Virus record (IMG/VR): IMGVR_UViG_3300032562_000003
Coordinates: 1 to 64,000 of that record
Length of the DNA: 64,000 nt
Direction: 5' to 3' (one strand)
Both the position numbers and the translations under genes were made by a program. Under the pieces are notes generated by a model. The model was given only the letters and a program-made list of their open reading frames with translations. It was not told the DNA's origin and ran no database searches. Shown in pieces: positions 8,883-31,794 of the stretch (within the stretch, counting starts at the first letter, position 1; each line of letters begins with the position of its first letter).

Positions 8883-9497
8883 ATGTCTAATCGTTTCGTA
8901 GTTTCTGATACCCATTTTGGTCATACCAATTCATGGGAAAAGTTTAAGAAGGCTGATGGTTCGCCTCTGCGTCCTTTTAACTCAACTGAGGAAATGGACG
9001 AAGCGATGGTTGAACGCTGGAACAATATTGTTAGCCCTAGTGATACGGTGTATCACCTAGGTGATGTGGTCATCAACAAGAAGTCTCTGCATCACATCAA
9101 GCGTCTGAACGGTCACAAGCGTCTGATTCGTGGTAACCACGACATCTTTGACGACAAGCTGTACTATGAGGTTGGCTTCGATAAAATTGTGGCTTACCGA
9201 GTCTTTGTGGATGAATTTGTGTTTTCGCATATTCCTCTGCATCCGGATTGCATCAGTGATCGGTTCAAGTGTAACGTACATGGACATACCCATAGCAATA
9301 TCGTCACGCGAACGATTGTTACTGAACAAGGAGTCGAACAAAAAGAGGTTGATCCTAGGTATCTGTGTGTATCAGTGGAACACACTAACTTTGCCCCTAT
9401 TAGTTTTGAAGAGGTGAAGGCTAGAATACAAGCTCAAAACGAAGCTTGTGGTTATATGCCACCCAATAACAGTTGGGGTAATGGATCACCTACTTAG
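8883..9497 (+). CDS. Calcineurin-like metallophosphoesterase
   Basis: SDTHFGH, HLGD, GNHD, HGHTH. Confidence 0.9.
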   Translation: MSNRFVVSDTHFGHTNSWEKFKKADGSPLRPFNSTEEMDEAMVERWNNIVSPSDTVYHLGDVVINKKSLHHIKRLNGHKRLIRGNHDIFDDKLYYEVGFDKIVAYRVFVDEFVFSHIPLHPDCISDRFKCNVHGHTHSNIVTRTIVTEQGVEQKEVDPRYLCVSVEHTNFAPISFEEVKARIQAQNEACGYMPPNNSWGNGSPT

Positions 9498-10221
9498 TAG
9501 TATTGTGCATCAACCGACCCTTCTTGAACCCAATTGGTAACGGTGATCCGACTTTTATTTTTAAGTTTGTTTCACCGTTATTTATCCACATTGTTTTGTT
9601 CGGTCCTAATTTTTTTCCTTTATTCCAACTCGTATATCCCCTTTTACTCCAATGATTTTTAATTCCATTTTGTTTGTGGGTTTCAGGCTGTTGTTTTCCG
9701 AACCATCTGCTACCATCCCGTCCTAGCACAAACCCAGGTGGAATAGTAGATGTGGGATCAACCATCATTTCAGTGTGGTCGTTGTGTATCCAAATTTTGC
9801 CTCGCTGCATATTTGCTCCAATAACACTACCGAAATTGTTAAACGGAAGTCTACCTAATTTAAATGAATCGTCTGGTGGCGTTTCTCGAAATATTGTAAT
9901 ATTTCCGTCATTCCAGTGCCTGGTAGTTACAGTTGATCCGTCACCGGCTTCTGGTTTTAAATTCGCCCAGGTCTTCTTTCCGAATTCGTCTTTATCTTCG
10001 ACTATGTTCCATAATGTACTATAATACATTCCCCATTCTTTTATTTCTTCAAGTGTTTGACATTCACGTAAAATTTCAGTAGTAATATCTTTTCCATGTA
10101 TTTTAATATGATCCTTCCAATACGTTCCGGAACCTTGATATTTATATGGATTTTGTGTAGTTTTTCCTAAATAGTGTAGACCTGTTTTGTTATGAGTTTT
10201 CTTATACAAATAAATAGTCAT
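9490..10221 (-). mobile_element. Free-standing GIY-YIG (Seg-like) homing endonuclease with WxNNG repeats
   Basis: IYLYKKTHNKTGLHYLGKT..Y.GSG..W; HWNDG/WIHND/WINNG repeats. Confidence 0.85.
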
Positions 10222-10293
10222 GTGCTGATGTTTCCTTTCGTAGCATTAGAGCGGGTAGATGCGCCAACATCGTGATCCGCAACATTATTTATC
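10222..10293 (-). promoter_or_regulatory. Late promoter + two-hairpin structured leader of the HEG (copy A)
   Basis: GATAAATA..GCGGAT-CAC-GATG-TTGGCG-CATC-T-ACCCGC-TCTAATGCTA..AGGA.ACATCAGCACATG; covaries with 30181 copy. Confidence 0.7.
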
Positions 10294-10335
10294 ATTATTC
10301 TTGACTTTTTCTAATAAACCCATTATTATTAATGT

Positions 10336-10527
10336 ATGGATGACTTATTTTCTGATATAATTTGGGCAATTTCTTCTACTATTAGAAATCCTTCGATCAA
10401 AGAAGAACTATTTGCGGAATTGATTCCTATTTTTGACAAACAAAAAACATTTGACGAGACGACTTGTTTCAACATAGATGACTCGTTTGATACTGTATGG
10501 AACAAATGGATAGATGAAACAAGTTGA
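10336..10527 (+). CDS. Hypothetical protein
   Basis: ORF after TTGACT promoter. Confidence 0.55.
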   Translation: MDDLFSDIIWAISSTIRNPSIKEELFAELIPIFDKQKTFDETTCFNIDDSFDTVWNKWIDETS

Positions 10528-10557
10528 CATTCTCTTTAATCTGTACTATTGTAAGTT

Positions 10558-11031
10558 ATGGTTAAGGAGAATGTCATGACTTTGAAGAAGGGTGAAATGC
10601 TTGGTAAGATGCTGGTCATCGCTACTAATGCTCACCAAGGTCAATTTGACAAAGGCGGCGCACCGTATATTCTTCACCCCTTGAAGGTTATGCATTATCT
10701 CAAGACGGACGATGAAGAATTGCAATGCATTGCTCTTGGCCATGATGTCATCGAAGACACTGCGGTCACATACCAAGACCTTCGTAGTCAAGGCATGTCT
10801 GAACGTGTCATCGACGGTATTCGCGCACTTACTAAGGTTCCGGGCCAAACCTACGATGAGTACAAAGAATGCGTCTTTGCGAATAAGGATGCTATGAGAG
10901 TGAAGATGGCTGATCTTCGGCACAACACTGATATTCGTCGTCTTAAGGGCGTTTCTGAAAAGGACATTGCTCGTATGGCAAAGTATCAGATGTTTTATCT
11001 TGAGATTCAGGCCCGCTTGCAAAAGGAGTAG
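10558..11031 (+). CDS. HD-domain hydrolase, stand-alone (p)ppGpp hydrolase (Mesh1/SAH)-like
   Basis: AHQGQ.DK.G.PYI.HP...HDVIEDT...LTK...VKMAD..HN. Confidence 0.8.
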   Translation: MVKENVMTLKKGEMLGKMLVIATNAHQGQFDKGGAPYILHPLKVMHYLKTDDEELQCIALGHDVIEDTAVTYQDLRSQGMSERVIDGIRALTKVPGQTYDEYKECVFANKDAMRVKMADLRHNTDIRRLKGVSEKDIARMAKYQMFYLEIQARLQKE

Positions 11032-11033
11032 AT

Positions 11034-11462
11034 ATGGAAGACGATGACTGGGACTATGCCTCCCTTGATTTGATGGAAAGCTGGACTCAAAACATCTATC
11101 CAATCACGAGTAACCCCTATTCTGAGGAATTAAAAGACATGCAAAACATTGCCAATGCAGCGGTCAAGGCTCTTGAACGCGGAGACACTTTGGATCAGTT
11201 GATCAAGCGCAACCCTTCTTTTAAAAAGTTGTACAAAGAGTACAAAGCTGAACAGGCAGCAATCGATAAGGCGAAGGCCGCGAATGCTGCCCGACTTGAA
11301 AAAGAAGCCGGCCGTCGCGCCGCCGAAGTTGCTGCTCGTACAGAAATCGCAGCCAAGTTAACTCCCGAAGAACTGGCTGTATTTGGTCTAAATGAGCAGG
11401 GTGCCAAAAAGAGGGCTCCTGTAAAGAAAGTTACTAACGCAAGGACAAGGAGTTATCGGTGA
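11034..11462 (+). CDS. Hypothetical protein
   Basis: In operon; C-terminal KLTPEELAVFGL motif similar to the next gene's KLSEKDRKALGL. Confidence 0.7.
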   Translation: MEDDDWDYASLDLMESWTQNIYPITSNPYSEELKDMQNIANAAVKALERGDTLDQLIKRNPSFKKLYKEYKAEQAAIDKAKAANAARLEKEAGRRAAEVAARTEIAAKLTPEELAVFGLNEQGAKKRAPVKKVTNARTRSYR

Positions 11463-11791
11463 GCGAAGAATCCGAAGAACACATCACTCAAGAAGTCTAT
11501 GATGAACTTCTTAAGGTTACTGATGCTAAGACCCGCTATAATAGGGACCACAGAGTCGCAATGAAGTCTATGGTTTCTTTGGTTAAGTCTGGGCACGCCG
11601 CCTTTCTATTCCTTAGGGATGATGAGTGCCGAGAATGGTGGTCAAAGGAAGTTAAGGCTGCTGCGACAAAAGTAAATAACCGAAAGGAAAAGCGTAGAAT
11701 TTACGAACTAAAGAAGTCAGCATGGGATAAGCTGTCAGAAAAGGACCGTAAGGCGCTTGGTCTTCGTAAACCCATCGAACCAAAAGGCTAA
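11459..11791 (+). CDS. Hypothetical protein
   Basis: Overlapping GTGA coupling. Confidence 0.7.
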   Translation: MSEESEEHITQEVYDELLKVTDAKTRYNRDHRVAMKSMVSLVKSGHAAFLFLRDDECREWWSKEVKAAATKVNNRKEKRRIYELKKSAWDKLSEKDRKALGLRKPIEPKG

Positions 11792-11794
11792 TCT

Positions 11795-12283
11795 ATGGAA
11801 GACTTTCTCCTTAGGAATCTTAAAGTAAATGACAGTGTGATTTTTATCGCGCCCGGATCTACTAAGAATTTGGCATTGGGTAGAGTTATCAAGCTTAATC
11901 CAAAAACCGTTAGAATTGTCTACAGAGATGACCGATACGATGGAACGCCATGGGCACAATATCAGCCCAGCAGTGAAGAAGCCAATCGGCCATATAAAGA
12001 AGTCGTCAAGGTCGATGGACCCGATCTAACTATGTATTTGTTGAAGAAGTAATAAATGGCGGAACTACCTAAACATTATGATCTTCTAGGTAGACAATTG
12101 GCAGTCGGTGATTATATCGCCTACCCTGATGGCAATAGTCTAAGACTCGGCACGGTTGACAAACTTAACCCCAAAATGGTTAGAGTTAGCGGGCTAAAAC
12201 GCACATGGAACGTCAATAAATATGCTAGTGACACAGTAAAGCTTGACGGACCCGATCTGGTCATGTATCTACTTAAGAACTAA
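11795..12283 (+). CDS. Two tandem paralogous SH3/KOW-like small proteins (11795..12052, 12056..12283)
   Basis: Shared L.V.D.....LG.V.KLNPK.VR...VK.DGPDL.MYLLK. Confidence 0.75.
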
Positions 12284-12296
12284 TAAAGGAAAACAA

Positions 12297-12602
12297 ATGT
12301 CTATCGCAGTCGTTGAGCCAGAATCTGATTGGACTGATTCTGATTGGAATGTATTTGAAAGTTCTATCAAGGAACTACTTCATAATAAGCTGGTTACAGT
12401 AAAGTTTACTAAAAAGGATGGTAGCGAGCGATTGATGCATTGCACGCTTCAAACTGATCTCCTTCCTCCTCAAGAGATTAAGGAGAATAAGGAACCGCGC
12501 AAGAGGTCTGACACCTCGATTGCAGTCTATGATGTGCAAGCTAATGGTTGGAGAAGCTTCACCTATCGTTCGGTTTATAGAATCGAATATGCTGTAGACT
12601 GA
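12297..12602 (+). CDS. WYL-like/SH3 beta-barrel protein
   Basis: VTVKFTKKDGSERLMHCTL...VYDV...GWRSF. Confidence 0.7.
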   Translation: MSIAVVEPESDWTDSDWNVFESSIKELLHNKLVTVKFTKKDGSERLMHCTLQTDLLPPQEIKENKEPRKRSDTSIAVYDVQANGWRSFTYRSVYRIEYAVD

Positions 12603-12721
12603 CTTAAAAAGTATAAGTGTTTTTAAACTACACCCTCGTACTAAATACTACTGTGTAGGCCTTGAGAAAGCCGAAACACAAAAGGCTTGACACTATATCA
12701 AGTTGGATGTATAGTTAGAAC

Positions 12722-12889
12722 ATGAAACGAGAAATTATTAAGTTTGAACCGAAACGCTTGAAGGCACGTGCCGCCGGACTCATTTTGTTCGGCGATACTC
12801 CCTTCAAGAACAAAGTAATCGAACCTAATACTCGCTACACGCGCAAAGCTAAGCATCCTAAAAAGGAATGTGACCTAAACCGTTACTAA
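12722..12889 (+). CDS. Small basic protein resembling ribosome-rescue factor ArfA (55 aa, not in ORF track)
   Basis: LFGDTPFKNKV....RYTRKAKH vs ArfA L.DPLFRQRV...YMRKGKH; own TTGACA promoter. Confidence 0.5.
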   Translation: MKREIIKFEPKRLKARAAGLILFGDTPFKNKVIEPNTRYTRKAKHPKKECDLNRY

Positions 12890-12914
12890 ACTTTTGATTT
12901 GTATAGTGAAGTGC

Positions 12915-13110
12915 CTGAGAGTCTCTATTGTGGAGATTCTCTGATTAACTGATATTTCAGTTAATTGCCAAATGGCCCTACGTAAGGGGATGCAAAACCC
13001 GTATCCAAGATACGGTTATCCCATTTATGGAAGGCTGATGGAAGTGCTACTGTATATACCTAACAGACTATCGTTGGTGTGGTATATAGCGGCCCAATTA
13101 AGGAAATACT
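12915..13110 (+). promoter_or_regulatory. Highly structured 5' leader of the cell-wall hydrolase gene
   Basis: Consecutive hairpins GAGAGTCTCTA/TGGAGATTCTC, ATTAACTGA/TCAGTTAAT, CTGTATATACC/GGTATATAG. Confidence 0.5.
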
Positions 13111-13695
13111 ATGTATACTTCTCAAACTACGGCTAGTAAAATGGCCAAACTATGTAAAGTTTTAGCTGTCGCACTTTGCATTTCTTTTTCTTGGCAGCAA
13201 CTACATGCGCAAGAAGCCGCAAATACTAATCCGGTTCCCGCTCTTAGTCCGGAACAATTACTAAAAGACGCATACGACAGTGCTAAATTCCTGTCAATCG
13301 TAGACACCGCAGAAAAAATTAACTATACTAATCGAGAACTGACGTGTCTAGCTAAGAATATTTACTATGAAGCAGGGCATGAGACTCAGGTAGGCAAACT
13401 AGCTGTGGCTCAAGTGACTATAAACCGTACTCAAAGTCCTAAATTCGCCAACTCCATTTGCGGAGTGGTACTAGCACCAAACCAATTCAATTGGGCTAGT
13501 AATAAAAAGACTAGGTTGTCATTGCCCAAAGGAGCTGCATGGGAAGACTGTTTGAAGGTCGCCCAACAGGCTCTTGATGGCAAGAGGGTTAAGGGCATAG
13601 AGCACGCCCTGTACTTTCATGCTAGTGTGGTTCATCCTCACTGGGCACGCTTAATACGCCTTGCTCAAATAGGTACTCAGATTTTCTACGGATAA
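13111..13695 (+). CDS. SleB-like cell wall hydrolase (Hydrolase_2)
   Basis: Signal peptide; CLAKNIYYEAGHE..GKLAVAQVTINR...ICGVV...QF.W...ALYFHA. Confidence 0.9.
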   Translation: MYTSQTTASKMAKLCKVLAVALCISFSWQQLHAQEAANTNPVPALSPEQLLKDAYDSAKFLSIVDTAEKINYTNRELTCLAKNIYYEAGHETQVGKLAVAQVTINRTQSPKFANSICGVVLAPNQFNWASNKKTRLSLPKGAAWEDCLKVAQQALDGKRVKGIEHALYFHASVVHPHWARLIRLAQIGTQIFYG

Positions 13696-13935
13696 TCATT
13701 GACTTTCCCTCGTTTTGATCTTATATTGACGTAAGATTGGAACGAGGGTTTTTTATGGATGAACTGGTAGAATTTACCAAAGAATGCGGAGCCCTTGTTC
13801 GTTGGGAAGCTGGCGAACGGCCACAATTTAGCACTGGTGTGTGTGAATCACTCACTTGCGGTTATAGAAAGTTAGATGAATATGGATATTGGGAATATCC
13901 TCTATATCCTGCAGAAAAATATTTGGAGATGTTGC

Positions 13936-14163
13936 GTGATCAATCTAACCGTATTTAAGTGGCTGGGCACTGGATTTACTATTGCAGGAGCAATGGCTAC
14001 TGCATTTAAGTTGGATCCGCTCAATGTAGTGTTGCTGAATTTGGGTTCTGTGTTTTGGCTTGTCGCTGCACTGCGAATGAAGGAATCTTCACTGATTGCA
14101 GTGAACGGTGCCTTGCTCGGCATCTATGTCGTCGGTGCTGCCATTCGTCTCCACATGTTTTAA
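13936..14163 (+). CDS. Small membrane protein
   Basis: Three hydrophobic segments. Confidence 0.6.
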   Translation: MINLTVFKWLGTGFTIAGAMATAFKLDPLNVVLLNLGSVFWLVAALRMKESSLIAVNGALLGIYVVGAAIRLHMF

Positions 14164-14172
14164 GGTTTAGTT

Positions 14173-14406
14173 ATGCTACCTCCGATATCTGACGAACAAA
14201 TGATGTGGTATATTCTTAAGGGGTATACCATTCATGTGGACGTATTCGGAACTCGGGATTGGTTTTTAAACGGGCAACGTCACCGAGAAGATGGTCCTGC
14301 GATTGAATATGCGGATGGAAGTCGGGCTTGGTATCTAAACGACCAAAACATGACCGAAGAAGAACACCGAAAACTCACACAAAAGAAAATGGCTAATATC
14401 GGTTGA
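14173..14406 (+). CDS. 22-aa repeat protein, paralogue 2 (1 unit)
   Basis: Last ~75 nt identical to paralogue 1. Confidence 0.85.
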   Translation: MLPPISDEQMMWYILKGYTIHVDVFGTRDWFLNGQRHREDGPAIEYADGSRAWYLNDQNMTEEEHRKLTQKKMANIG

Positions 14407-14468
14407 CTTCGGGTATGTGTTTTGTTACTATGAATCATAGAGATTGACTCAACAAACGGAGACGTGAA

Positions 14469-14882
14469 ATGGCTTATATGTCGCAAGATCGCAAGCAACA
14501 GATCGCCCCTAAGGTGAAGGAACTTCTTAAGAAGTACAATCTTACGGGTTCTCTTTCGGTCGATAATCACTCTACGTTGGTGCTGACTATCAAGTCTGGT
14601 AAGATTGACTTTGTTGCGAACCAAAATCGCGTTTGCAGCCAGGAGCTGATGCTTATGAAAGTGGCACGTGGATTCACTCCCACTAAGTCAGCTTACGTTA
14701 ACCCGTATCACTATCAAGAGCATTTTGACGGCGAAGCCCTCGCTTTTCTGTCAGAAGTTATTCCGGCACTGAATGAAGGTAACTGGAATAAGTCGGACGT
14801 CCAATCGGACTACTTCAATGTGGGGTGGCACGCGGATGTAAATATCGGACGGTGGAACAAGCCGTACGAAGTAACTGCGTAA
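14469..14882 (+). CDS. Early hypothetical protein
   Basis: GGAG RBS, TTGACT promoter; N.S.VQSDYF.VGW...NIG.W.KPY motif. Confidence 0.8.
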   Translation: MAYMSQDRKQQIAPKVKELLKKYNLTGSLSVDNHSTLVLTIKSGKIDFVANQNRVCSQELMLMKVARGFTPTKSAYVNPYHYQEHFDGEALAFLSEVIPALNEGNWNKSDVQSDYFNVGWHADVNIGRWNKPYEVTA

Positions 14883-14916
14883 AAACTTAACCCCAACACA
14901 AACAAGGAAAACTGAA

Positions 14917-15066
14917 ATGCATACCTATTGGATTCTGGTTCGTAACGATGCCGGCACTAACATTCGTGTCGAGATTCAAGCTAATAACAACTACGAAGCT
15001 ATTCAGCTTGCTAAGGCTCTTTACGGTCCTAAGCTTTACTCTGAGAGCGCGAACTTCATTCGCTAA
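14917..15066 (+). CDS. Small hypothetical protein (49 aa, not in ORF track)
   Basis: AAGGA RBS; MHTYWILVRND... Confidence 0.6.
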   Translation: MHTYWILVRNDAGTNIRVEIQANNNYEAIQLAKALYGPKLYSESANFIR

Positions 15067-15162
15067 TGCGTTTTGGGTATGAGAGTCATTGACTTTCATA
15101 CCCTTCCGTATTATATATAATAATGTGTAATTTTGCACAGGTTCAACTTTTAAAGGTATTAC

Positions 15163-15731
15163 ATGACTACTCAACTATTTAAGGTTGTTGGTATTACGGC
15201 CCATAACGGCAACGCTAAGGTTCGCTTCACTGACGATATGGTTCGCCGTGTAAAGCAATTTGCTAAGGGCGGCGCCCAACGAACCGACTTTATTGAACTG
15301 CCGAACGAAATGAATAAGATCGATGCGCTCAAGCACATGCTTACCCATCCTTCTTATCAATCTGCGGAAGATCAAGCCACTATCAGTGACACTCTCGCTG
15401 ATAAGGAAAAGGAATCTCGTAAGGGCGAGGTCAAGGTTAAGGCTAAGCCTTCGCTAGACGCCATCAAGAATCGTCCTAAGATCGACACTACGGTTGATGA
15501 CATTCTCAATGCTGTAGGTTCCGAGTAATGGCTAAGGTGTTAAAGATCGCTGACAAACTGACTAAGGTCAGTGAAAGTGTTACTGTTCACTTCTACGACA
15601 ATGCTTATATGGTCGAAGTTTCAGGCCACAATAAGAATGATGATTGGGCCAATCTTAAATTGGTCTGTCATGATCTAGATGAAGTTGCTACACTTCTGAA
15701 GGAAGCTGATTCTCTTCCTAAGGATTCCTAA
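15163..15731 (+). CDS. Two hypothetical proteins (15163..15528, 15528..15731)
   Basis: TAATG-coupled ORFs. Confidence 0.75.
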
Positions 15732-15734
15732 TAT

Positions 15735-16593: not shown

Positions 16594-16603
16594 TGTGTTA
16601 TCC

Positions 16604-24458: not shown

Positions 24459-25009
24459 AGTGACTTACCCCACCTGGTGTTAATCACATTCCAGTTGATG
24501 ATCTTCCAAAGTTCGGTAAGATACTTTTTCTTATCTGAGCCATAGTCAAGCACAAATGAATGTTCCCACCAATCTACTAACAGTAGAATGTCATCGCGCA
24601 CTTCATGGTTCTTGATTGTTTTGATTTTGCCGTCGTAGGCTAGGTAGATCCAACCGGATCCATGAATCTTCATGGCTTCTTCTAAAAAGTCAGCCTGAAA
24701 CTTGCGATAATCACCGAAATGCTTATTGATAAAAGTAAGCATAGGCCCGTTCGGTTTGTTACCGACTCGCACTGCTCTGAATTGAGTAAACCATAAGTTA
24801 TGTAGGAAAACGCCCGCATAATTAAAATCGGGGTCACCTTCTTTGTCATTGAATCTTGTTGCGTAGCCTTTTGCCAACTTCTCATAATGCAGATTAAGGG
24901 TCTCTCCGCTCATGACGGGAGACACTTCTTTGACATCGAAGTTTAGTGCAATAATTTCTACGTCTTGAGGTTTTGATTTGTCCTCGAGGATGGTAATATA
25001 CTCACGCAT
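24455..25009 (-). CDS. sod: Fe/Mn superoxide dismutase (compact)
   Basis: LHY, FLHN, GSGW, DWWEH metal ligands. Confidence 0.85.
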   Translation of the reverse strand: MREYITILEDKSKPQDVEIIALNFDVKEVSPVMSGETLNLHYEKLAKGYATRFNDKEGDPDFNYAGVFLHNLWFTQFRAVRVGNKPNGPMLTFINKHFGDYRKFQADFLEEAMKIHGSGWIYLAYDGKIKTIKNHEVRDDILLLVDWWEHSFVLDYGSDKKKYLTELWKIINWNVINTRWGKSL

Positions 25010-25023
25010 GAGTATATTTATCG

Positions 25024-25239
25024 TTACTTGCGCCGAACTATTCTTCCTCGTGTAAGATCATACGGAGTTAGCTCCACGTCGACCTTATCACCCATAAGTA
25101 TGCGAATTTGATGCTGTCGCATCTTACCTGCTAGATGACTAAACACAATTACACCGTTATCAAGCTTTACTTTAAACGTTGCATTTGGTAGTACGTCTAT
25201 AATTTCTCCTTCCACCTTAATTGAATCCTGATTTGCCAT
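25024..25239 (-). CDS. infA: Translation initiation factor IF-1
   Basis: EG...[12 protein letters not shown]....H.AGKMR...[22 protein letters not shown]. Confidence 0.95.
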
Positions 25240-25242
25240 AAT

Positions 25243-25740
25243 TTATTTCTTTAGTATAGACCATATCGACTCCTTTTCGATAATCTCTTTTTCTAGCTCA
25301 CGATACCTATCACCGAGAGCCTTAAGTTCTTCCCACTTTTCTTCTAGTTGTGGATTTGGGTGAAGAATAGCTAAACGAGCTTCAATATCTTCTAGTGTTT
25401 TAATAAGGTATTTTCCTTTAATTGAAACCTTACCCTGAAAGTCTGCGTCGACCGAAACAGACAAAGTTGAACTTGGTGTAGAAACCGTATACGGACTTGA
25501 TGTCGCAGTAATAGTAGAAGAATATATGCTAGGTGACCAATTAATTCCGTAAGTGGTTCCGTTGGTTACAGAATATCCGCCGGTAGTAATAGTAGAATTA
25601 CTGAAAGTTGTAGCCATTCCTATAGGATTGTTGTTCATATTATTTAACCCATACGTCTGTGTAGGGCTGGTCACTTTAATACTGTTCAATATACTATCTA
25701 ACCTAGAAGTAAAAATACCGTCATCGGTTTCTTCGCTCAT
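25243..25740 (-). CDS. Hypothetical protein (S/T-rich + coiled coil)
   Basis: ORF in operon. Confidence 0.7.
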   Translation of the reverse strand: MSEETDDGIFTSRLDSILNSIKVTSPTQTYGLNNMNNNPIGMATTFSNSTITTGGYSVTNGTTYGINWSPSIYSSTITATSSPYTVSTPSSTLSVSVDADFQGKVSIKGKYLIKTLEDIEARLAILHPNPQLEEKWEELKALGDRYRELEKEIIEKESIWSILKK

Positions 25741-25925
25741 TTGCTTGCCTTTTTAAGAAATATTTGGCCAGAATCATCGATGCCGATTTCCACGTCATCG
25801 CCCTCTTTCCAACCTAATTGTTTTAATAATGGAATAGGTAGCGGAATGATGAGGTCGCCCGTCTCAGCGTCCTCTTGTGTGATTACCTCATACCTTACGC
25901 CGTTTGAATTTTTTGAAGTAGTCAT
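25737..25925 (-). CDS. AbrB/MazE-like DNA-binding protein
   Basis: GDLIIPLP..LLKQLGWKEGDDVEI. Confidence 0.75.
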   Translation of the reverse strand: MTTSKNSNGVRYEVITQEDAETGDLIIPLPIPLLKQLGWKEGDDVEIGIDDSGQIFLKKASK

Positions 25926-25974
25926 TCGCATCCCAAGGGTTGCGAGAATATATTATTGGGTGTCATTATGATAT

Positions 25975-26142
25975 TTATTCCGAACATGAGCAACTGTCAC
26001 AGTTACCGCATCGCTTAGAGTCACATGAAGAACAGTACCAGCCCTTTTCAGTGTGAACTACAGTATTTTGTCCGCATTTACCGCATCGTTTTCCGACAGG
26101 TTTTTTGGGTTGTTCTATCTTAAATACAGGTTCAGTGGTCAC
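25975..26142 (-). CDS. Small Cys-rich zinc-ribbon protein (55 aa, not in ORF track)
   Basis: GTG start overlapping upstream TGA; CGKCG...WYCSSC...CGNCDSCSC. Confidence 0.55.
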   Translation of the reverse strand: MTTEPVFKIEQPKKPVGKRCGKCGQNTVVHTEKGWYCSSCDSKRCGNCDSCSCSE

Positions 26143-26693
26143 TTACTAGTTTCCTTAAAAGCAGAGCAAAGACCACTCACAACCTTATCCAACCTATCTT
26201 CGTCAGCCTGATACTTGATTCCGATTCCGCCGGCAGCAATCCACTTTCGAATATTTACGCCATAGTCATCGATGAGTATGTTTGGAGTACCGTCCTTCTG
26301 AACAGCGTATTTGGCCTTATCATGATCAAATATAACATGTTTTGGTTTCACCGTTATATTCTTATTCAACCATTCGCGCTTTCCCTTGATACTACCGTCC
26401 CGATCAAAGTTCAGTGGGCTACTAAGAATGTCGTAGTCACCGGCAAACTTCTTTACTATTTCCAGCAGTTCGTTTGAAGTGGGGAAAACACCGATGCTTT
26501 TAAACAGATGAAATGCGTTGGAATCTCTGAAAAATGTTTCCCATTGATCAGGAGTCATTTCATTGTAATGTTCTACGTCGTGAAGATCACCTGCGTAACC
26601 GAATAGATCAGCTAGTACGCCATCCATATCCACAAATACGGTTGGTTTACCCTTGTCTAATTGCTTACTTTCTATTAGTTCTATGATCTTCAT
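26139..26693 (-). CDS. HAD-family 5'(3')-deoxyribonucleotidase
   Basis: FVDMDGVLAD, ILSSP, GKREW, LIDD. Confidence 0.85.
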   Translation of the reverse strand: MKIIELIESKQLDKGKPTVFVDMDGVLADLFGYAGDLHDVEHYNEMTPDQWETFFRDSNAFHLFKSIGVFPTSNELLEIVKKFAGDYDILSSPLNFDRDGSIKGKREWLNKNITVKPKHVIFDHDKAKYAVQKDGTPNILIDDYGVNIRKWIAAGGIGIKYQADEDRLDKVVSGLCSAFKETSK

Positions 26694-26791
26694 AGATTAT
26701 ATTTATTCAAACTTACTAAATATTACGTATTATTACATGAAGAATCTTTGATGTCAAGGATCTTCATAGCCAAAAACAATAAGGAAAACAA

Positions 26792-27379
26792 ATGGCTCTA
26801 ATAGACACAGTAATGAACATATTTATGAAAACAACAAAGGACCCAAATGCTCCTAAGCCACCTCCCGGTTCTCGTTCAGAACGTGAGGCAAAAATTAAGG
26901 ACAAAGCAGGCATGGTAATCAACGTGTTTGCATTACTGCTTGCAGTAAATGCCTGGTACGGAGGAAAGTTGAGTAGCACAGTAATGAATAACACTATCGC
27001 TGCGAATGACGTTTGGAATTTTTATGAGGCTAAGTCCATTAAGCAAACACAGTATGAATTAGCTGCGCTACAGACACCTAATAAAATTCTTGCTAAGCAA
27101 TGGCAGGATAAGGCTGCTAGTTACGAAAGCGATCCTAAATCCGGCGAGGGTAAGAAGGAACTTATGGCTAAGGCAAACAAGCTAGAAGCAGAAAGAAATG
27201 AAGCTAAAAAACGCAGTCCATGGATTGGTTTTGCGGGTACTGCATTCCAACTAAGCATTGTTATTCTTTCAGCGAGCATCCTTGCGGTTAGTATGGATTT
27301 GTTTTGGGGTAGTTTTATTGTAGCAGGGATTGGTGTAGTGTTGATGACACAAGGTCTATGGCTTTGGATGCCATTCTAA
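26792..27379 (+). CDS. DUF4337-like membrane protein
   Basis: TM-coiled coil-2TM; W.FY.AKSIKQ. Confidence 0.65.
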   Translation: MALIDTVMNIFMKTTKDPNAPKPPPGSRSEREAKIKDKAGMVINVFALLLAVNAWYGGKLSSTVMNNTIAANDVWNFYEAKSIKQTQYELAALQTPNKILAKQWQDKAASYESDPKSGEGKKELMAKANKLEAERNEAKKRSPWIGFAGTAFQLSIVILSASILAVSMDLFWGSFIVAGIGVVLMTQGLWLWMPF

Positions 27380-27385
27380 CACGAA

Positions 27386-27862
27386 TCAGTGCCTAGTACG
27401 ATTACGACTTTTTCTAATAGGTACGTAATCTTTGTTTGGAATAGGTGATCTGTCGGGGATGATGTGATGAAAATCAATTGCATCGTCCCCGAATTTTATC
27501 ATAGCATATGCTATAATCTTATCCGCATCGTCATTATCACTGAATCCTATGATAAGATGCCCTAAAAAATGAACCTTTGTTTTGATATGCTTTTTGAGAG
27601 TTACATCTGTAAGGATATCAGTAAAATCGTTTGACTCTCTATGAAACAGTATCTTCTTCATTTACTTTTTCCAAACTAAAAATGCTACGTAGTCTCGTTC
27701 GGACTCAAATAGGAATTCAAATTCTTCATACATATTATTGCGAGCATGGTCGAATCCCCATTCTGCTTCACAGTTACGTTTACACCATTCTACAACGTGT
27801 TTTAATTCTCCATATGGAATAGTAACGTTGGCGCTATGAGCAGTCGGTACATTGATAGACAT
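27386..27862 (-). CDS. Two hypothetical proteins (27386..27661, 27662..27862)
   Basis: Coupled ORFs; the latter ends FLFESERDYVAFLVWKK. Confidence 0.65.
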
Positions 27863-28265
27863 TAATACCTCCTTGGGTCAAAAATTTTAAGCCACTGTCA
27901 TCTCTGTATTTTTCTTTATAATAAACAGTGGAAATTTTGGCTTGATATATGAGCTTCGCACAGTCGATACAAGGTGCGTGTGTACAAAAAAAAGTAGCAC
28001 CTTCACTAGATTCCGTACTACACGCTACCTTGCTAATTGAATTTGCTTCGGCGTGCAGTACTTCTGGACGAGTTTTGAGGGTACCGTCCTCTAGTGTAAT
28101 CTCGCAGTTATTGTCCCAACCGGCCGGCATACCATTATAACCAGTAGCAATAATTTGGGAGTCACCTTTAACTATTACGGCTCCTACTTTCAATCGTTTA
28201 GCATAACTGAGTGTAGCAGTTAGTTCAGCAAACTCCATAAAATACTTTATAAATTTAGGTTTCAT
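27834..28265 (-). CDS. dCMP deaminase
   Basis: VGAVIV..GYNG, HAEAN, PCIDC. Confidence 0.92.
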   Translation of the reverse strand: MKPKFIKYFMEFAELTATLSYAKRLKVGAVIVKGDSQIIATGYNGMPAGWDNNCEITLEDGTLKTRPEVLHAEANSISKVACSTESSEGATFFCTHAPCIDCAKLIYQAKISTVYYKEKYRDDSGLKFLTQGGINVYQCTDCS

Positions 28266-29030
28266 GTCTTGCATCGTTCATTGTGGTGTTTATAAAAATT
28301 AGGACTCTCGTTCGCTGTCATACCACATATATTGCATGTGACCTGTTTAATCGAAACCGGCTTTTTATTTGGATTTGTCTTGCAGTTATCCATATGCCAC
28401 CTTTTCATATTTTTATAGTCTCCGGTCTTACCGCAGTGGGAACAAGTGAGTACAGTGGTATCCTGCGGCCGCAATCGCATAGCCTCTTTATGTAATTCTG
28501 ATTTTTTCTTACCTTTAAGTGATTCACTGATTTTTAATGCCGCCACTGCGATCCTAGCATCAGTGTGTTTTGTTTTTCCGATATGCCAACTTTGATTATT
28601 AGGATTGTTTAACCTGGATTCTGTCCTACACCTAATATGTTTTTCTGATTGTTTTCTACCTCTCATTTTCTTTTTTTGCGAATCAATGCTGTGTTTTGAC
28701 TTGTGGTGCCCTAACGTCCCGTCGCCGCCTAATGTCATATTATAACCATTAGAGTTTTCCGAATAGAAATAGGAGTTGTATTCTACAATAAACCAGTTTT
28801 CCATAACTTTCAGTGTATAGTCTCCGTCTTCCGATTCATATATGACCTCCCATATAAAGTTTTCCCAACCATATTTTCGTATAGCATTATAGAACACAGT
28901 TGATCTTTCTGCGCCGCGATTAGCATTGTGTTTGTGTTGGGCCTTCCTGCGCGGCCACCTCGAATCGAAGCCTATATAAACCTTTTGATTCACTGTGTTA
29001 GTTGCTTTGTATATAACATAACTTCTTCAT
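28262..29030 (-). pseudogene. GIY-YIG homing endonuclease with NUMOD3-like repeats; start ATG one base out of frame
   Basis: YVIYKATN...VYIG..R...H; GYNMTLGGDG; ATG at 29030 (after late promoter) is +1 relative to the ORF. Confidence 0.7.
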
Positions 29031-29068
29031 AAACCTATTTATCGAAGGTTATGGGACTAAAAATTAAC

Positions 29069-29593
29069 CTAATCCCAAAGCGAACGGTAGTATGTGGCAA
29101 ACAAATCCAATCCTTCTTGGATTCGATCCTCATGCATTTGTGCACCGACATAATCATGCCAATGCTCTCCGGTATTCTTTAATCGGTAAGTTGGTGAAGA
29201 TTTTCCGGTAGTAGGATCAGTGTAAGATTCAACTTTTTCCCATTCTAGAGACAGATCACCATGATGATATTTGTCTTCGTAATCTTCGTATGCGATCTGT
29301 TGAAAAGACCAGATCATCTTGTCTAGTGTTTCTTCCCACTTATCGCAATTTTTTTGAAAGACTTCATCTTTGTCTTCCTTCATGAAATCGAAAACTGCTT
29401 GGTTGGAATAATCCTCACAAGACTCGTCTATAAATTCACCGGGTACACCGTGTTTAGTTTGCTTTAGCTGTATAAGCGCAGGTAGGATAATGAGGGCTAG
29501 AGTATGATCTAGCCCCCAAGTGTCGAATTTATCTATTTCGATACTAATTTTGCGGTGAGCGTTTTTTAGGAATTTTCCCAGACTAACTTTCAT
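29069..29593 (-). CDS. Phage hypothetical protein
   Basis: D.W.LDHTLA.II.P.L..LK...HG.P motif. Confidence 0.75.
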   Translation of the reverse strand: MKVSLGKFLKNAHRKISIEIDKFDTWGLDHTLALIILPALIQLKQTKHGVPGEFIDESCEDYSNQAVFDFMKEDKDEVFQKNCDKWEETLDKMIWSFQQIAYEDYEDKYHHGDLSLEWEKVESYTDPTTGKSSPTYRLKNTGEHWHDYVGAQMHEDRIQEGLDLFATYYRSLWD

Positions 29594-29933
29594 TGCTTAC
29601 TGATTTTGCCTTTCCGTTAATGAACCAAAATATTTTACTCGATCCAATGTCCGTAGGATAAGTAACGAACGCTAGGTTTATCCGTCTAGTATTTGACAGT
29701 TCTGCTGCAAGCCCATCGATTGTGCTTGATTGACCTAAAAAGGCCTTAGTTTCTTTATCATAAAGATAATAGTTTCCTGACTCATATTCTGCAATGCAGA
29801 ACGGAAAAGAAGACTTTCTCTTGATAAACTGATCCAAATTTTTAGTGAGTTCGGCCGTTAGCGCGGATCTAGTGCCGAGATAGTATCCGGCACCCAAACA
29901 GACCAACGCTAACAAGAGAAGTGCTGCATTCAT
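29583..29933 (-). CDS. Membrane-anchored hypothetical protein
   Basis: N-terminal hydrophobic helix; late promoter. Confidence 0.65.
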   Translation of the reverse strand: MNAALLLLALVCLGAGYYLGTRSALTAELTKNLDQFIKRKSSFPFCIAEYESGNYYLYDKETKAFLGQSSTIDGLAAELSNTRRINLAFVTYPTDIGSSKIFWFINGKAKSVSNES

Positions 29934-30180
29934 GATAATATTTATCCTTACCACTCAGGTCCAAAGACAGCCCCGTACATTAACTCAACTTCCTTGTCAA
30001 GCAAGATTCGGTCAAACTGATCAGTCATAGTCAGTTTACCAGTACTTTCAGTGAGACGCACTACCTTACAATCGTAGATGTCGTCTAATTTTGCTTCCCA
30101 GATAATCATAGTTAAATCTCCAAAAACTTGAGTTGAATGCAATATAACAAACAATAGCAGATGAGTCAACAAAAACGGAC

Positions 30181-30247
30181 TAAATAAAGATGTAGTTCGC
30201 GGATCTAGGAAATCCCAACTACTCTAACGCTATATAGGAGCATCAGC
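30181..30247 (+). promoter_or_regulatory. Late promoter + two-hairpin structured leader of the HEG (copy B)
   Basis: TAAATA..GTAGTT-CGC-GGAT-loop-ATCC-C-AACTAC-TCTAACGCTA..AGGAGCATCAGCATG. Confidence 0.7.
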
Positions 30248-30910
30248 ATGACTATTTATTTGTACAAGAAGACCCACAATAAAACCGGCTTACAATATCT
30301 TGGTAAGACCGAAAAGGATCCATATACCTATTGTGGTTCTGGTACTCGCTGGTTAACCCATCTTGATAAGCACGGCACTGACTTAACTACAGAAATCATC
30401 AAAGAATGTGCTACTAAAGAAGAAATGACTTACTGGGGCTCCTACTACAGCGAACTCTGGAATATTGTAAAGAGTGATGAATGGGCTAACCTAAGACCAG
30501 AAACCGGCGACGGAGGAGACACGAGCAAAACGGAGAACTTTAAGAAATGGATTCCCCGTATGGTTGAGGAAAATAAGCTACGCAGATGGTGGAACAATGG
30601 AACTAACCAAGTGTTTGAGCAACTACCACCAGATGATAGTTATGTTCCAGGTAGATTACAGTTTAACAACCTTGGTGCCAAAATAGGAACTGATAGACAA
30701 CGAGGAAAGGTTTGGATCAATAACGGGAAGCATGAAATGATGGTTCATGGTAATGGCATTCCCGCCGGATATACCGTAGGGAGATTATCATCTCCTAAGA
30801 AGAACAAGCCCAACTTACACGCAGCCGGTACTAAGTGGTGGAACAACGGAATCAAATCTACTATGGCAAGAGAATGCCCTGGACCCGAATGGACCCGAGG
30901 CAGACTTTAA
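30248..30910 (+). mobile_element. Free-standing GIY-YIG homing endonuclease, paralogue of 9490..10221
   Basis: MTIYLYKKTHNKTGL.YLGKT identical start; WWNNG/WINNG repeats. Confidence 0.85.
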
Positions 30911-31794
30911 TCTCTTGACCAGTTGACACCGTCAAACTTCTCCGGCATGTTATCCAAATCAATGAATCGTAGCTTGAAGTTTGCTGCGTTTGGTTCGTGC
31001 CCTGCATAACCTCGAGGGTTAGCTACGACAAAGGTATCACCCATATAGTAACTATGAGGATTATGAACATGTCCCAAAGTCCACAGGACTATCTGAGGAT
31101 GATCTAGGATGAACTCTGACAGGTCGCTATAGTAGCCACCGTTCATCCAGGTGTCCTTCTTATACATTTCATGAATGCTAAGCGATGTAGGAGCATGGTG
31201 TCCAACCACCACATACTTCTTAGTAGCATCACTTTCAACCACCTCCTGAATGTAATTCAGTGTGGCTTCGTGATGCAGCACAGCATCCAATGGGCTGAAC
31301 CTAGCATAGTTACGCCGGCTATTACGAATGATCCTAAAATCATTCATCATACCCTCGATGACATGCATAGTAGTAGGATCACGCTTGTTCATGTTTGACC
31401 AAAGTGTTCCGCCCACAAATGTAACATCGTCAATTACAACGGTGTCCATGTCAAGAAAGTGAATGTTAGGATAGTTCGTAAATTCTTCACGCAGCCAACC
31501 ATAAACATCAGGATAGGGACCATGATAAAACTCGTGGTTGCCCGCCACATATACCACATGCTCATATTCATCACTCACATGCTTGAAGAACTCACGATAC
31601 CTTACAGCGCCGCCTTGGTTTCTGCCAGGCTTCATCGCATCTTCTGGCACAGGCTTATCGATGGGATGATCATGTAGTGAGTGAGCTACACAGATATCGC
31701 CGGATAGGATCAGAACATCGGCCCCGTCGGTGTTGGTAAGGGTGATGGGCGCGATCTCCAAATGAAGATCCGATGCCAAAGCTATCTTAATCAT
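30907..31794 (-). CDS. Calcineurin-like metallophosphoesterase
   Basis: SDLHLE, SGD, GNHE, HHAP, GHVH. Confidence 0.9.
   Translation of the reverse strand: MIKIALASDLHLEIAPITLTNTDGADVLILSGDICVAHSLHDHPIDKPVPEDAMKPGRNQGGAVRYREFFKHVSDEYEHVVYVAGNHEFYHGPYPDVYGWLREEFTNYPNIHFLDMDTVVIDDVTFVGGTLWSNMNKRDPTTMHVIEGMMNDFRIIRNSRRNYARFSPLDAVLHHEATLNYIQEVVESDATKKYVVVGHHAPTSLSIHEMYKKDTWMNGGYYSDLSEFILDHPQIVLWTLGHVHNPHSYYMGDTFVVANPRGYAGHEPNAANFKLRFIDLDNMPEKFDGVNWSRD

What the first reader, a model, noticed from the sequence alone, without database searches (positions are those of the whole stretch)
8883..31794. GIY-YIG mobile element with a covarying leader RNA, twice inserted tail-to-tail with metallophosphoesterase genes
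Seen: both HEGs (9490..10221, 30248..30910) have TAAATA-[P1a]-C(A/G)C-[P1b]-loop-[P1b']-Y-[P1a']-TCTAAYGCTA...AGGA..CATCAGC(AC)ATG. The stem sequences differ but pairing is kept (GCGGAT/ACCCGC vs GTAGTT/AACTAC; GATG/CATC vs GGAT/ATCC), and the second hairpin covers the SD. Both overlap the stop codon of a convergent calcineurin-like phosphoesterase. Known: T4 HEGs are translationally damped by RBS hairpins and cut neighbouring conserved genes. Inference: a conserved cis-regulatory RNA motif lying downstream of the late promoter, and a shared target gene family.
Basis: partly seen in the sequence, partly recalled or inferred. Interest (0 to 1): 0.6.

Follow-up and report, generated by a model that had tools for sequence, protein, structure and literature searches.

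The report
Antisense-RNA control cassette of phage homing endonucleases
A 95-base control cassette sits in front of many unrelated selfish nuclease genes in uncultured giant phages, and its two covarying hairpins fit the opposite strand best, so it probably makes a small antisense RNA that restrains the nuclease.

Summary
The leader is: late-promoter word NATAAATA, a bulged hairpin P1, TCTAAYGCTA, a Shine-Dalgarno (SD) site, ATCAGC, then ATG. It precedes both window HEGs. It occurs 8 times in this 259-kb phage record and in at least 190 distinct versions in IMG/VR. It sits in front of 13 N-terminal ORF families, including GIY-YIG and HNH nucleases. Both P1 and a second helix, P2, which holds the SD in its loop, covary strongly.

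The structure is built for the opposite strand. Almost all non-Watson-Crick pairs are A.C on the HEG strand, which are G.U on the antisense strand (P1 27 vs 5; P2 131 vs 14). The antisense fold is more stable in 93 of 98 cases. HEG codons 2-4 (TATTTAT) are held at synonymous sites and in two reading frames. Their complement is a second late-promoter word, 5 nt from the foot of P2. On the antisense strand P1 is followed by a U-rich tail.

Best reading: a portable expression cassette with face-to-face late promoters that makes a roughly 70-nt cis-antisense RNA over the RBS, like IS10 RNA-OUT or SymR. No RNA data could be obtained.

The "shared phosphoesterase target family" is not supported: neighbours are diverse. 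Each phosphoesterase 3' end is nevertheless a real, recurrent insertion site.

The parts
8883..9497 (+). MPE1, a calcineurin-like phosphoesterase. Its last 8 nt overlap the HEG1 stop region. It is the probable homing target of HEG1.
   Evidence: Pfam Metallophos E 4.6e-6 and phrog_547 E 3.6e-51. In the HEG-less allele L326-328, MPE1 is followed directly by the orf157 homologue. An old 3' remnant lies beyond a different HEG in L331-337.
9490..10221 (-). HEG1, a seg-like GIY-YIG homing endonuclease of 243 aa.
   Evidence: 48% identical to HEG2. phrog_314 is weak. The family N-terminus folds like I-TevI.
10209..10216 (+). Reverse late-promoter word AATAAATA, the complement of HEG1 codons 2-4. The predicted antisense start is at 10222.
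   Evidence: Read. It is one of only 9 antisense-in-gene ATAAATA words in the 259-kb genome, and 7 of those lie in cassettes. Synonymous-site constraint on these codons.
10222..10293 (+). Predicted cis-antisense RNA of cassette 1: 5' hairpin P2' with the anti-SD in its loop, hairpin P1', and a U-rich tail.
   Evidence: strand folding gives two hairpins, -18.3 kcal/mol, z -1.49. The sense leader gives z +0.03.
10222..10250 (-). P2 region of the HEG1 leader: tail TCTAATGCTA, SD AGGA at 10236..10233, and the ATCAGC arm.
10251..10280 (-). P1 hairpin of the HEG1 leader: 6 bp, C-A-C with a central pair, then 4 bp. It has one A.C on this strand, which is G.U on the antisense strand.
10286..10293 (-). 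Forward late-promoter word GATAAATA, 5 nt before the first G of P1.
   Evidence: ATAAATA is 69% intergenic in this genome. The genome has a gp55-like late sigma factor.
10336..10527 (+). orf63, a small ORF that is absent from the HEG-less allele together with HEG1 and its leader. It is probably cargo of the insert.
   Evidence: L326-328 lack it. A sigma-70-like promoter lies at 10301..10329 (+).
30179..30186 (+). Forward late-promoter word ACTAAATA of cassette 2.
   Evidence: This variant occurs in 6 of 83 leaders.
30192..30222 (+). P1 hairpin of the HEG2 leader.
30223..30247 (+). P2 region of the HEG2 leader: tail TCTAACGCTA, SD AGGAG at 30236..30240, and ATCAGC.
30180..30247 (-). Predicted cis-antisense RNA of cassette 2.
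   Evidence: strand folding gives two hairpins, -18.8 kcal/mol, z -2.27. The sense leader gives z +1.19.
30253..30260 (-). Reverse late-promoter word AATAAATA inside HEG2 codons 2-5. The predicted antisense start is the complement of 30247.
30248..30910 (+). HEG2, a seg-like GIY-YIG homing endonuclease of 220 aa.
   Evidence: Orthologues (56-81% identity) sit at the same place next to MPE2 orthologues in L245-250, L259, L262 and L263.
30907..31794 (-). MPE2, a calcineurin-like phosphoesterase of a different family from MPE1. It is the probable homing target of HEG2.
   Evidence: Pfam Metallophos and phrog_1649 E 1.3e-53. HEG-less alleles end near residue 280 (L251-257, L261, L268). An old 3' remnant lies in L249/L250.

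Best explanation
The element is a portable expression-and-control cassette of about 95 bp for free-standing homing endonuclease genes of uncultured jumbo phages that use T4-type late transcription.

The cassette supplies the following, in order:
- a forward late promoter (NATAAATA);
- a predicted mRNA start at the first G of hairpin P1;
- a second helix, P2, with the SD in its loop;
- the ATG and the first codons.

The complement of codons 2-4 is a second late promoter that faces back. From it a roughly 70-nt antisense RNA is made. This RNA starts at the foot of P2', displays the anti-SD in that loop, continues through P1' and ends in the U-rich complement of the forward promoter.

This countertranscript pairs with the leader over the RBS and start codon. 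It keeps nuclease synthesis low, as IS10 RNA-OUT does for transposase and SymR does for SymE. Because the cassette is conserved and multicopy, it may also act on other copies.

Shown: the cassette, its spread, the covariation of both helices, the strand bias, the nucleotide-level constraint on the reverse promoter word, and the late sigma factor.

Inferred: both transcription starts, termination, and repression.
For: Covariance model R1 finds 8 copies in the window's own genome and 13, 13 and 7 copies in three other large records. Thirteen N-terminal ORF families follow the cassette, including HNH and GIY-YIG.

**Structure.** All 11 P1 pairs covary. P2 covaries, with 0 of 500 shuffles reaching the observed value.

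**Strand.**
- P1 non-Watson-Crick cells are 27 A.C against 5 G.U. As distinct states this is 9 against 0, p 0.004.
- P2 has 131 A.C against 14 G.U.
- P2 folds at -6.81 kcal/mol antisense against -2.83 sense, and antisense is the more stable in 93 of 98.
- P1 folds at -10.53 against -9.08, p 2e-6. The 10 nt after P1 hold 6.1 U on the antisense strand against 3.5 on the sense strand.
- For the window copies, z is -2.27 and -1.49 antisense against +1.19 and +0.03 sense.

**Reverse promoter.**
- NATAAATA is present on the reverse strand at codons 2-4 in 78 of 83 leaders, and lies 5 nt from GCTGAT in 65.
- TATTTAT is kept in two reading frames.
- Ile codon 3 is ATT in 63 of 64 ORFs against 39% elsewhere, p 4e-23.
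- ATAAATA is 69% intergenic in this genome, and 7 of its 9 antisense-in-gene occurrences are in cassettes.
- A gp55-like late sigma factor is encoded (phrog_12791, E 6e-75).
- Both promoters have T at -1 and G at +1.
Against: There is no RNA evidence: no RNA run was listed for this sequence, so no read mapping could be done.

The simple terminator scan does not call the bulged P1'. The U tract is largely a by-product of the forward promoter.

The ATAAATA/TATTTAT pair could instead be the arms of a T4-style long-range helix. Weak instance-specific extension is seen, p about 0.03.

Sequences are related and partly ascertained by the motif itself, so counts are not independent events.

Both promoters would fire at the same time, so the regulatory logic (a threshold, damping or cross-talk) is inferred.
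Confidence: 0.5

Rival explanations
1. Sense-strand leader. P1 is a 5'-terminal stabiliser hairpin of the late HEG mRNA. P2 presents or damps the SD. TATTTAT pairs with the promoter word in read-through transcripts, so that only late transcripts are translated (the T4 I-TevI / segB / mobE rule).
For: The forward promoter lies 5 nt before P1 in 52 of 83 leaders, with T at -1 and G at +1. T4 precedent is described in PMC2988022. ATAAATA and TATTTAT are complementary, and complementarity extends to 13-14 bp in L044 and L083. P1 also folds on the sense strand at -9.1 kcal/mol.
Against: The A.C excess over G.U in both helices. Sense P2 averages -2.8 kcal/mol and RNAfold leaves the SD open. Both helices lie downstream of the promoter, so late transcripts keep them. 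Extension of the long-range helix is weak overall, p 0.03-0.09. Half of the cassettes are antiparallel to both neighbours, so no upstream sense transcripts are expected there.
Confidence: 0.2
2. Terminator/insulator and promoter donor for the host strand. On the strand opposite to the HEG, the hairpins plus U tract stop transcripts that run antisense through the HEG. The embedded reverse promoter restores or adds late transcription of the flanking genes. This would be a PeSL-like punctuation unit, and any short RNA would be a by-product.
For: 36 of 67 scorable cassettes are antiparallel to both neighbours. In 18 of 81 a TTGAC-type -35 box for the divergent neighbour abuts the cassette, including both window copies. 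The strand bias fits. T4 HEGs are known to embed promoters for neighbouring genes (PMC2988022).
Against: 20 of 67 cassettes are co-oriented with both neighbours yet keep the same architecture. P2' is not needed for termination. There is no conserved sequence upstream of the forward promoter (information about 0). A terminator between the reverse promoter and the neighbour contradicts promoter donation.
Confidence: 0.17
3. DNA-level element. The conserved block is a portable homology or recombination site, possibly a strand-specific ssDNA hairpin. It lets endonuclease ORFs be swapped between sites, and it is conserved by gene conversion among copies rather than by an RNA function.
For: Different HEG families occupy the same site behind the same leader: the MPE2 site in L041/L279, L266 and L242, and the MPE1 site in L322 against L331. 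There are 7 to 13 copies per genome in the four cassette-rich records. PeSL cassettes are proposed to shuffle ORFs in this way (PMC4122927). G.T is also the best-tolerated mismatch in DNA hairpins.
Against: Stems vary freely while pairing is kept, which gene conversion alone does not produce. Promoter words, SD and ATG show that the block is an expression unit. No recombinase or HUH-type protein is linked to it.
Confidence: 0.1

Closest known systems
IS10/Tn10 RNA-IN / RNA-OUT, and SymE/SymR (cis-antisense control of a mobile-element or toxic nuclease gene); named from my own knowledge
   Same: Face-to-face promoters. The antisense promoter lies in the first codons of the gene. The result is a roughly 70-nt structured antisense RNA over the RBS and start codon. 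The stem is bulged. Multicopy elements could cross-inhibit.
   Different: The setting is a lytic jumbo phage with T4-type late promoters on both strands. The regulated genes are homing endonucleases of several families. There are two hairpins, with the anti-SD in a loop. No experimental RNA exists, and there is no sequence relation to these systems.
T4-type RBS-sequestering hairpins of I-TevI, I-TevII, I-TevIII, segB and Aeh1 mobE (PMC2988022)
   Same: A late promoter lies immediately upstream of a HEG, with RNA structure next to the RBS. The aim is to limit nuclease expression. The seg43(25) hairpin of Aeromonas phage 25, which lies upstream of the RBS without pairing to it, looks most like P1.
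   Different: In T4 the promoter lies inside the hairpin and the SD is paired. Here both helices are downstream of the promoter, the SD is in a loop, and the fold is optimised on the other strand. One conserved cassette also serves many unrelated HEGs.
PeSL / PmSL mobile regulatory cassettes of T4-like phages (PMC2839356, PMC4122927)
   Same: Short, conserved, multicopy promoter-plus-stem-loop units at the borders of variable ORFs, proposed to mediate modular exchange.
   Different: PeSLs are a stem-loop followed by a sigma-70 early or MotA middle promoter, and they are not tied to HEGs. This cassette has late-type promoter words on both strands, two covarying helices, an SD, the ATG and four codons. 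It precedes endonuclease genes almost exclusively.

Membership tests
GIY-YIG homing endonuclease (HEG1, HEG2) | GIY-YIG catalytic fold (beta-beta-alpha-beta-alpha) | tested here: met
   AF2 model of the family N-terminus, pLDDT 87.5. The Foldseek top hits are I-TevI 1mk0/1ln0, E 4.4e-4, prob 1.0, TM 0.65-0.67. Pfam and a PDB sequence profile gave nothing significant.
GIY-YIG homing endonuclease (HEG1, HEG2) | Conserved catalytic Arg, Glu and Asn in place | not tested
   Alignment A3 has invariant Y, G-S-G, W, N and E columns. They were not mapped onto I-TevI residues.
GIY-YIG homing endonuclease (HEG1, HEG2) | Presence/absence polymorphism at a fixed site in related genomes | tested here: met
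   HEG-less MPE1 alleles are L326-328. HEG-less MPE2 alleles are L251-257, L261 and L268. Orthologous HEG2 sits at the same site in 10 loci.
GIY-YIG homing endonuclease (HEG1, HEG2) | Site-specific cleavage of the HEG-less allele | not testable with these tools
   The only evidence is indirect: duplicated old MPE 3' ends beyond the insert.
T4-type RBS-sequestering hairpin | SD or AUG base-paired in a stable hairpin | tested here: not met
   The SD lies in the P2 loop. Sense MFE from tail to ATG averages -2.83 kcal/mol. RNAfold leaves the SD open in both window copies.
T4-type RBS-sequestering hairpin | Late promoter inside the hairpin, so that late transcripts lack the 5' arm | tested here: inconclusive
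   Not true for P1 or P2. It is possible for the 7-nt ATAAATA/TATTTAT pair, but extension beyond the core is weak, p 0.03.
PeSL cassette | Stem-loop followed by a sigma-70 early (or MotA middle) promoter | tested here: not met
   The conserved block carries NATAAATA words. A TTGAC box on the opposite strand occurs in only 18 of 81 and lies outside the conserved block.
PeSL cassette | Multicopy conserved unit at the borders of variable ORFs | tested here: met
   8, 13, 13 and 7 copies in the four cassette-rich records. 13 ORF families follow it.
cis-antisense RNA control (IS10 RNA-OUT / SymR type) | Outward-facing promoter within the first codons of the regulated gene | tested here: met
   This holds at sequence level only. 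NATAAATA is present in 78 of 83, with fixed 5-nt spacing in 65. Synonymous-site and two-frame constraint, and rarity of the word inside genes elsewhere.
cis-antisense RNA control (IS10 RNA-OUT / SymR type) | Antisense transcript has its own selected fold | tested here: met
   Covariation plus G.U bias towards the antisense strand in both helices. Energy differences agree.
cis-antisense RNA control (IS10 RNA-OUT / SymR type) | The RNA exists and represses the gene | not testable with these tools
   No RNA run was listed.
Intrinsic terminator (antisense P1' plus U tract) | G+C-rich stem immediately followed by a U run | tested here: inconclusive
   11 pairs with bulges, mean -10.5 kcal/mol, and 6.1 U in the next 10 nt. 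The simple scan does not call it.
Any Rfam 15 family | Covariance-model match | tested here: not met
   No match at E up to 1 on either strand of four cassette loci.

The most novel reading that the evidence does not exclude
The conserved antisense RNA acts in trans across all cassettes in an infected cell, including those of a co-infecting phage. Carrying any one cassette would then damp every cassette-driven endonuclease. That would make it an RNA-based cross-immunity network among selfish nucleases, and it would explain why unrelated HEG families keep the same leader sequence.
Probability: 0.15. Interest if true: 0.85.

Novelty: new variant of a known kind. Interest (0 to 1): 0.72.

Why it matters
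Free-standing homing endonucleases are thought to depend on the transcription of their insertion site or on individual hairpins. This cassette shows a different arrangement: one self-contained promoter/leader/start unit shared by GIY-YIG and HNH nucleases, present in 7 to 13 copies in each of the four cassette-rich records. It is seen in hundreds of metagenomic contigs and in none of 50,697 GenBank phage records at blastn sensitivity.

If the antisense RNA is real, it would be, as far as I could find, the first countertranscript control described for phage homing endonucleases, and a new abundant phage RNA family absent from Rfam. It also gives a directly testable explanation of how endonuclease ORFs are exchanged at one site. 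It would offer a compact, context-independent late-expression part. Finally, the G.U/A.C asymmetry is a clean worked example of assigning the strand of a structured RNA from sequence alone.

Tried and rejected
- **tRNA-like minihelix or tRNA remnant.** The loops are not T-loop-like and the stems differ between copies, so this was dropped.
- **Known RNA family.** Rfam gave no match.
- **Long-range helix between promoter and codons 2-4, beyond the 7-nt core.** The first script had an indexing error. When redone, only a weak signal remained, driven by two related loci.
- **YUNR U-turn motif in the P1 loops.** Not enriched: 19 sense against 15 antisense of 54.
- **Expression evidence.** No RNA run was listed, so no read mapping could be done.
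- **Cultured relatives of the leader.** blastn 'distant' with two leaders found nothing in 50,697 phage records. Megablast of both loci also found nothing.
- **Profile-based locus search with alignment A3.** It was replaced by a DNA pattern anchored on P1.
- **Alignment-based counting of P2 on A4.** Abandoned because the register shifts between variants. It was replaced by a register-searching script with a swapped-partner control.
- **Metallophosphoesterase as the general neighbour.** Rejected.
- **Mutational bias as the cause of the A.C excess.** Considered and judged unlikely. Cassettes lie in both orientations, and deamination of the coding strand would give the opposite bias. This is inference.

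Full report
**What is at the coordinates**

The window is the first 64 kb of a 258,859-bp IMG/VR virus record estimated at 73% complete.

- HEG1 (9490..10221, minus strand, 243 aa) and HEG2 (30248..30910, plus strand, 220 aa) are 48% identical.
- HEG1 overlaps the stop region of MPE1 (8883..9497, plus) by 8 nt. HEG2 overlaps that of MPE2 (30907..31794, minus) by 4 nt. In both cases the phosphoesterase is convergent.
- Both MPEs hit Pfam Metallophos, but they belong to different PHROG families (547 and 1649) and do not align with each other (BLAST E 0.77).
- The HEGs have no Pfam hit. An AlphaFold model of the family's N-terminal 100 residues (pLDDT 87.5) matches the I-TevI catalytic domain best (E 4.4e-4, TM 0.65). 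The GIY-YIG label therefore holds by fold.

**The leader is real and very widespread**

- A protein search of the window's own genome found two more seg-like copies with the same leader.
- A DNA pattern built from the tail and the ATCAGC box hit at least 117 IMG/VR loci. A second pattern, anchored only on the promoter word and the commonest P1 arm, hit at least 119 more. After de-duplication these gave 83 and 110 distinct leaders.
- A covariance model built from the first set (R1) finds 8 cassettes in the window's own genome. They lie at about 10.2, 30.2, 97.2, 131.5, 132.5, 142.7, 199.3 and 210.1 kb.
- R1 also finds 13 cassettes in a complete 360,683-bp record, 13 in a 333-kb record, and 7 divergent ones with the same architecture in a complete 195-kb record. 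It finds none in a 303-kb record that does have an MPE2 homologue.
- Rfam 15 has no match on either strand. blastn found nothing in 50,697 GenBank phage records. The paper library holds neither the motif words nor an antisense control of phage HEGs.

**It is not specific to one endonuclease**

- The ORFs behind the 83 leaders fall into 13 N-terminal families.
- These include the seg-like GIY-YIG family (28 members), other GIY-YIG types, an HNH family with an I-TevI-type DNA-binding domain (10), and an HNH_3 family (7).
- All of them begin with ATG followed by a conserved TATTTAT. In one HNH family the same bases are read in another frame (M-I-F-I instead of M-T-I-Y), while their distance from ATCAGC stays 5 nt.
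- Among 64 ORFs that start M-x-I-Y, Ile codon 3 is ATT in 63, against 39% of Ile codons elsewhere in the same ORFs (p 4e-23). Tyr codon 4 is TAT in 59, against 71% elsewhere (p 9e-5).
- The first four codons therefore belong to the cassette and are constrained as nucleotides.

**Two helices, both with covariation**

- P1 consists of 6 bp, a G-C or A-U pair flanked by two bulged C, then 4 bp, with a 6-7 nt loop.
- All 11 P1 pairs have changes on both sides. 95.9% of cells are paired, against 28-50% in slid controls. The covariation score is 0.494 against 0.146 in shuffles (0 of 500).
- P2 pairs the tail (TCTAAYGCT and its variants) with the bases just before the ATG, with the SD in its loop.
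- In the P1-anchored set, where P2 was not part of the search pattern, the tail varies widely. Each tail pairs with its own partner at 7.72 of 9 positions, against 6.71 (sd 0.07) with swapped partners (0 of 500).

**The fold belongs to the other strand**

- In P1 the non-Watson-Crick cells are 27 A.C or C.A against 5 G.U on the HEG strand. Counted as distinct states this is 9 against 0 (p 0.004).
- In P2 the counts are 131 A.C against 14 G.U. An A.C on one strand is a G.U wobble on the complement.
- The tail-to-ATG segment folds at -6.81 kcal/mol as antisense against -2.83 as sense. The antisense fold is the more stable in 93 of 98 leaders (p 2e-17).
- P1 folds at -10.53 kcal/mol antisense against -9.08 sense (p 2e-6).
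- The two window antisense stretches fold into two clean hairpins (z -2.27 and -1.49). The sense leaders score z +1.19 and +0.03 and leave the SD open.
- A mutational explanation is unlikely, because cassettes lie in both orientations relative to their neighbours. This is inference.

**A promoter for that strand**

- The complement of TATTTAT plus the next base is NATAAATA. It is present in 78 of 83 leaders, and in 65 it lies exactly 5 nt from the G that begins the antisense P2 arm.
- The forward word likewise lies 5 nt from the first G of P1 in 52 of 83 leaders. Both promoters have T at -1 and G at +1.
- In this genome ATAAATA behaves as a reserved signal. 63 of its 91 occurrences fall in the 9.4% of the genome that is intergenic, whereas words of the same composition are 7-30% intergenic, apart from TAAATAA (48%), which overlaps the motif itself.
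- Only 9 occurrences lie antisense inside genes, and 7 of these are in cassettes.
- Non-cassette copies precede many genes at 17-45 nt, with a purine at position 6 after the word in 23 of 30.
- The genome encodes a gp55-type late sigma factor (phrog_12791, E 6e-75).
- T4 late promoters consist essentially of this 8-bp word. This last point is from my own knowledge; the I-TevI context is described in PMC2988022.
- On the antisense strand P1 is followed by the complement of the forward promoter and its A-rich spacer. That gives 6.1 U in 10 nt, against 3.5 on the sense strand. The cassette spacer is more A-rich than in the other late promoters of the genome.

**Most likely mechanism**

The cassette is a self-contained late expression unit with face-to-face promoters about 85 bp apart. 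The forward promoter gives an mRNA that begins with P1. The reverse promoter gives an antisense RNA of about 70 nt: P2' with the anti-SD in its loop, then P1', then a U tail.

This RNA is fully complementary to the 5' UTR up to the start codon. Pairing would block initiation or expose the duplex to RNase III, and the convergent promoters would also interfere with each other. That is the architecture of IS10 RNA-IN/RNA-OUT and of SymE/SymR (my own knowledge).

The G.U/A.C asymmetry would make the antisense RNA stably folded while leaving the mRNA leader open.

- Shown: the anatomy, the covariation, the strand bias, the constraint on the reverse word, and the sigma factor.
- Inferred: the two start sites, termination, and repression. 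No RNA run was listed.

Predicted duplexes between the antisense RNA of one cassette and the leaders of the other seven in this genome range from -34 to -107 kcal/mol, so cross-talk is thermodynamically possible.

**Rivals**

It explains the promoter spacing and the TATTTAT constraint. It does not explain the strand bias, and instance-specific extension of that helix is weak.
2. *Host-strand terminator plus promoter donation.* This fits the 36 of 67 cassettes that are antiparallel to both neighbours, and the abutting TTGAC boxes in 18 of 81. It does not fit the 20 co-oriented ones or the conservation of P2'.
3. *A DNA-level exchange site.* Different HEG families do occupy the same site behind the same leader, as PeSL cassettes are proposed to allow (PMC4122927). 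Free variation of the stems with pairing kept argues for an RNA function as well.

These readings are not mutually exclusive.

**The phosphoesterase link**

- Across 83 cassettes, the 150 nearest neighbours fall into 108 clusters.
- Of 73 downstream neighbours, 5 are Metallophos, 4 are NUDIX and 3 are RNA ligase.
- Three of those five are MPE2 and its orthologues, and one is MPE1. A shared target family is therefore not supported.

Each site, however, is a genuine homing site.

- HEG-less alleles exist for both MPEs (L326-328; L251-257, L261, L268).
- HEG2 orthologues (56-81% identical) sit at the same position next to MPE2 orthologues (57-79% identical) in ten loci.
- In L249/L250 and in L331-337, a remnant of the old MPE 3' end lies beyond the insert, while the working gene carries a different 3' end.
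- The insert therefore brings a replacement 3' end, and the break is probably made inside the conserved 3' coding region.
- The window's HEG1 insert also carries orf63 (10336..10527), which the HEG-less allele lacks.
- MPE2 can also have a second cassette just upstream of its start.

**Context**

The nearest cultured relatives, by an SbcC-like protein at 39% identity, are PA5oct-type Pseudomonas jumbo phages. The HEG proteins have only distant relatives in cultured phages.

**Verdict**

It is probably wrong about the strand and wrong about a shared target family.

As a kind of system, the element is a new variant of two known principles: antisense control of a mobile-element nuclease, and PeSL-like regulatory cassettes. 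As an RNA family it is undescribed in Rfam and in the papers searched.

Noticed in passing
L249:4780-4960 and L250; L331-L337 (for example L333:4100-4300): Remnants of the old 3' ends of the phosphoesterase genes lie downstream of the HEG cassette, while the intact gene carries a different C-terminus. For MPE2 the remnant covers residues 249-283 and ends ..FQLKFMEI*. For MPE1 it covers residues 165-202. Three small ORFs (61, 66 and 81 aa) lie between the cassette and the remnant in L249.
   Followed up: partly
window 10301-10527 (+): orf63 is absent from the HEG-less MPE1 allele and so appears to have arrived with HEG1. It is preceded by a sigma-70-like promoter (TTGACT-17-TATTAT) that abuts the cassette on the opposite strand. 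The HEG2 cassette has a similar box at 30169..30141 (-).
   Followed up: partly
L245-L250, L261, L264-L269, about 2330-2460 (-): Some phages carry a second leader cassette with its HEG immediately upstream of, and divergent from, the MPE2 start. The gene is then flanked by cassettes on both sides.
   Followed up: no
G000 about 132492-132880 (+) and 97177-97276 (-): Two of the eight cassettes in the window's genome lead decayed genes. One is a seg-like ORF broken by a TAG after 35 codons. The other is a 75-aa truncated GIY-YIG ORF whose leader has a compensatory change in P2 (GCT/AGC to ACT/AGT). In the 83-leader IMG/VR set, 7 ORFs are shorter than 90 aa.
   Followed up: partly
G000 about 145890-146786 (-) (L352:1405-2301): The late sigma factor homologue is 298 aa, against 185 aa for T4 gp55. 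Only residues 42-115 of gp55 align directly (32% identity), so it carries a large extra N-terminal part.
   Followed up: no
window 10558-11031 (+): The gene next to the HEG1 insert has a weak RelA/SpoT-type HD domain match (Pfam HD_4, E 4.7e-5, below the curated cut-off). It may be a phage (p)ppGpp hydrolase. Nearby are a GNAT acetyltransferase (7877..8368, -) and a protein with DnaJ-type zinc-finger repeats (8369..8818, +).
   Followed up: partly
G005 (303,057-bp record holding L319): This large record has an MPE2 homologue but no cassette at all, whereas relatives have 7-13. The cassette family is either present in force or absent.
   Followed up: no
L044:7326-7425 and L083:2431-2530: In these two related HNH cassettes, complementarity between the region upstream of the forward promoter and the codons after TATTTAT extends to 13-14 bp. 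A long-range helix, or an inverted duplication, may exist in this sub-lineage.
   Followed up: partly
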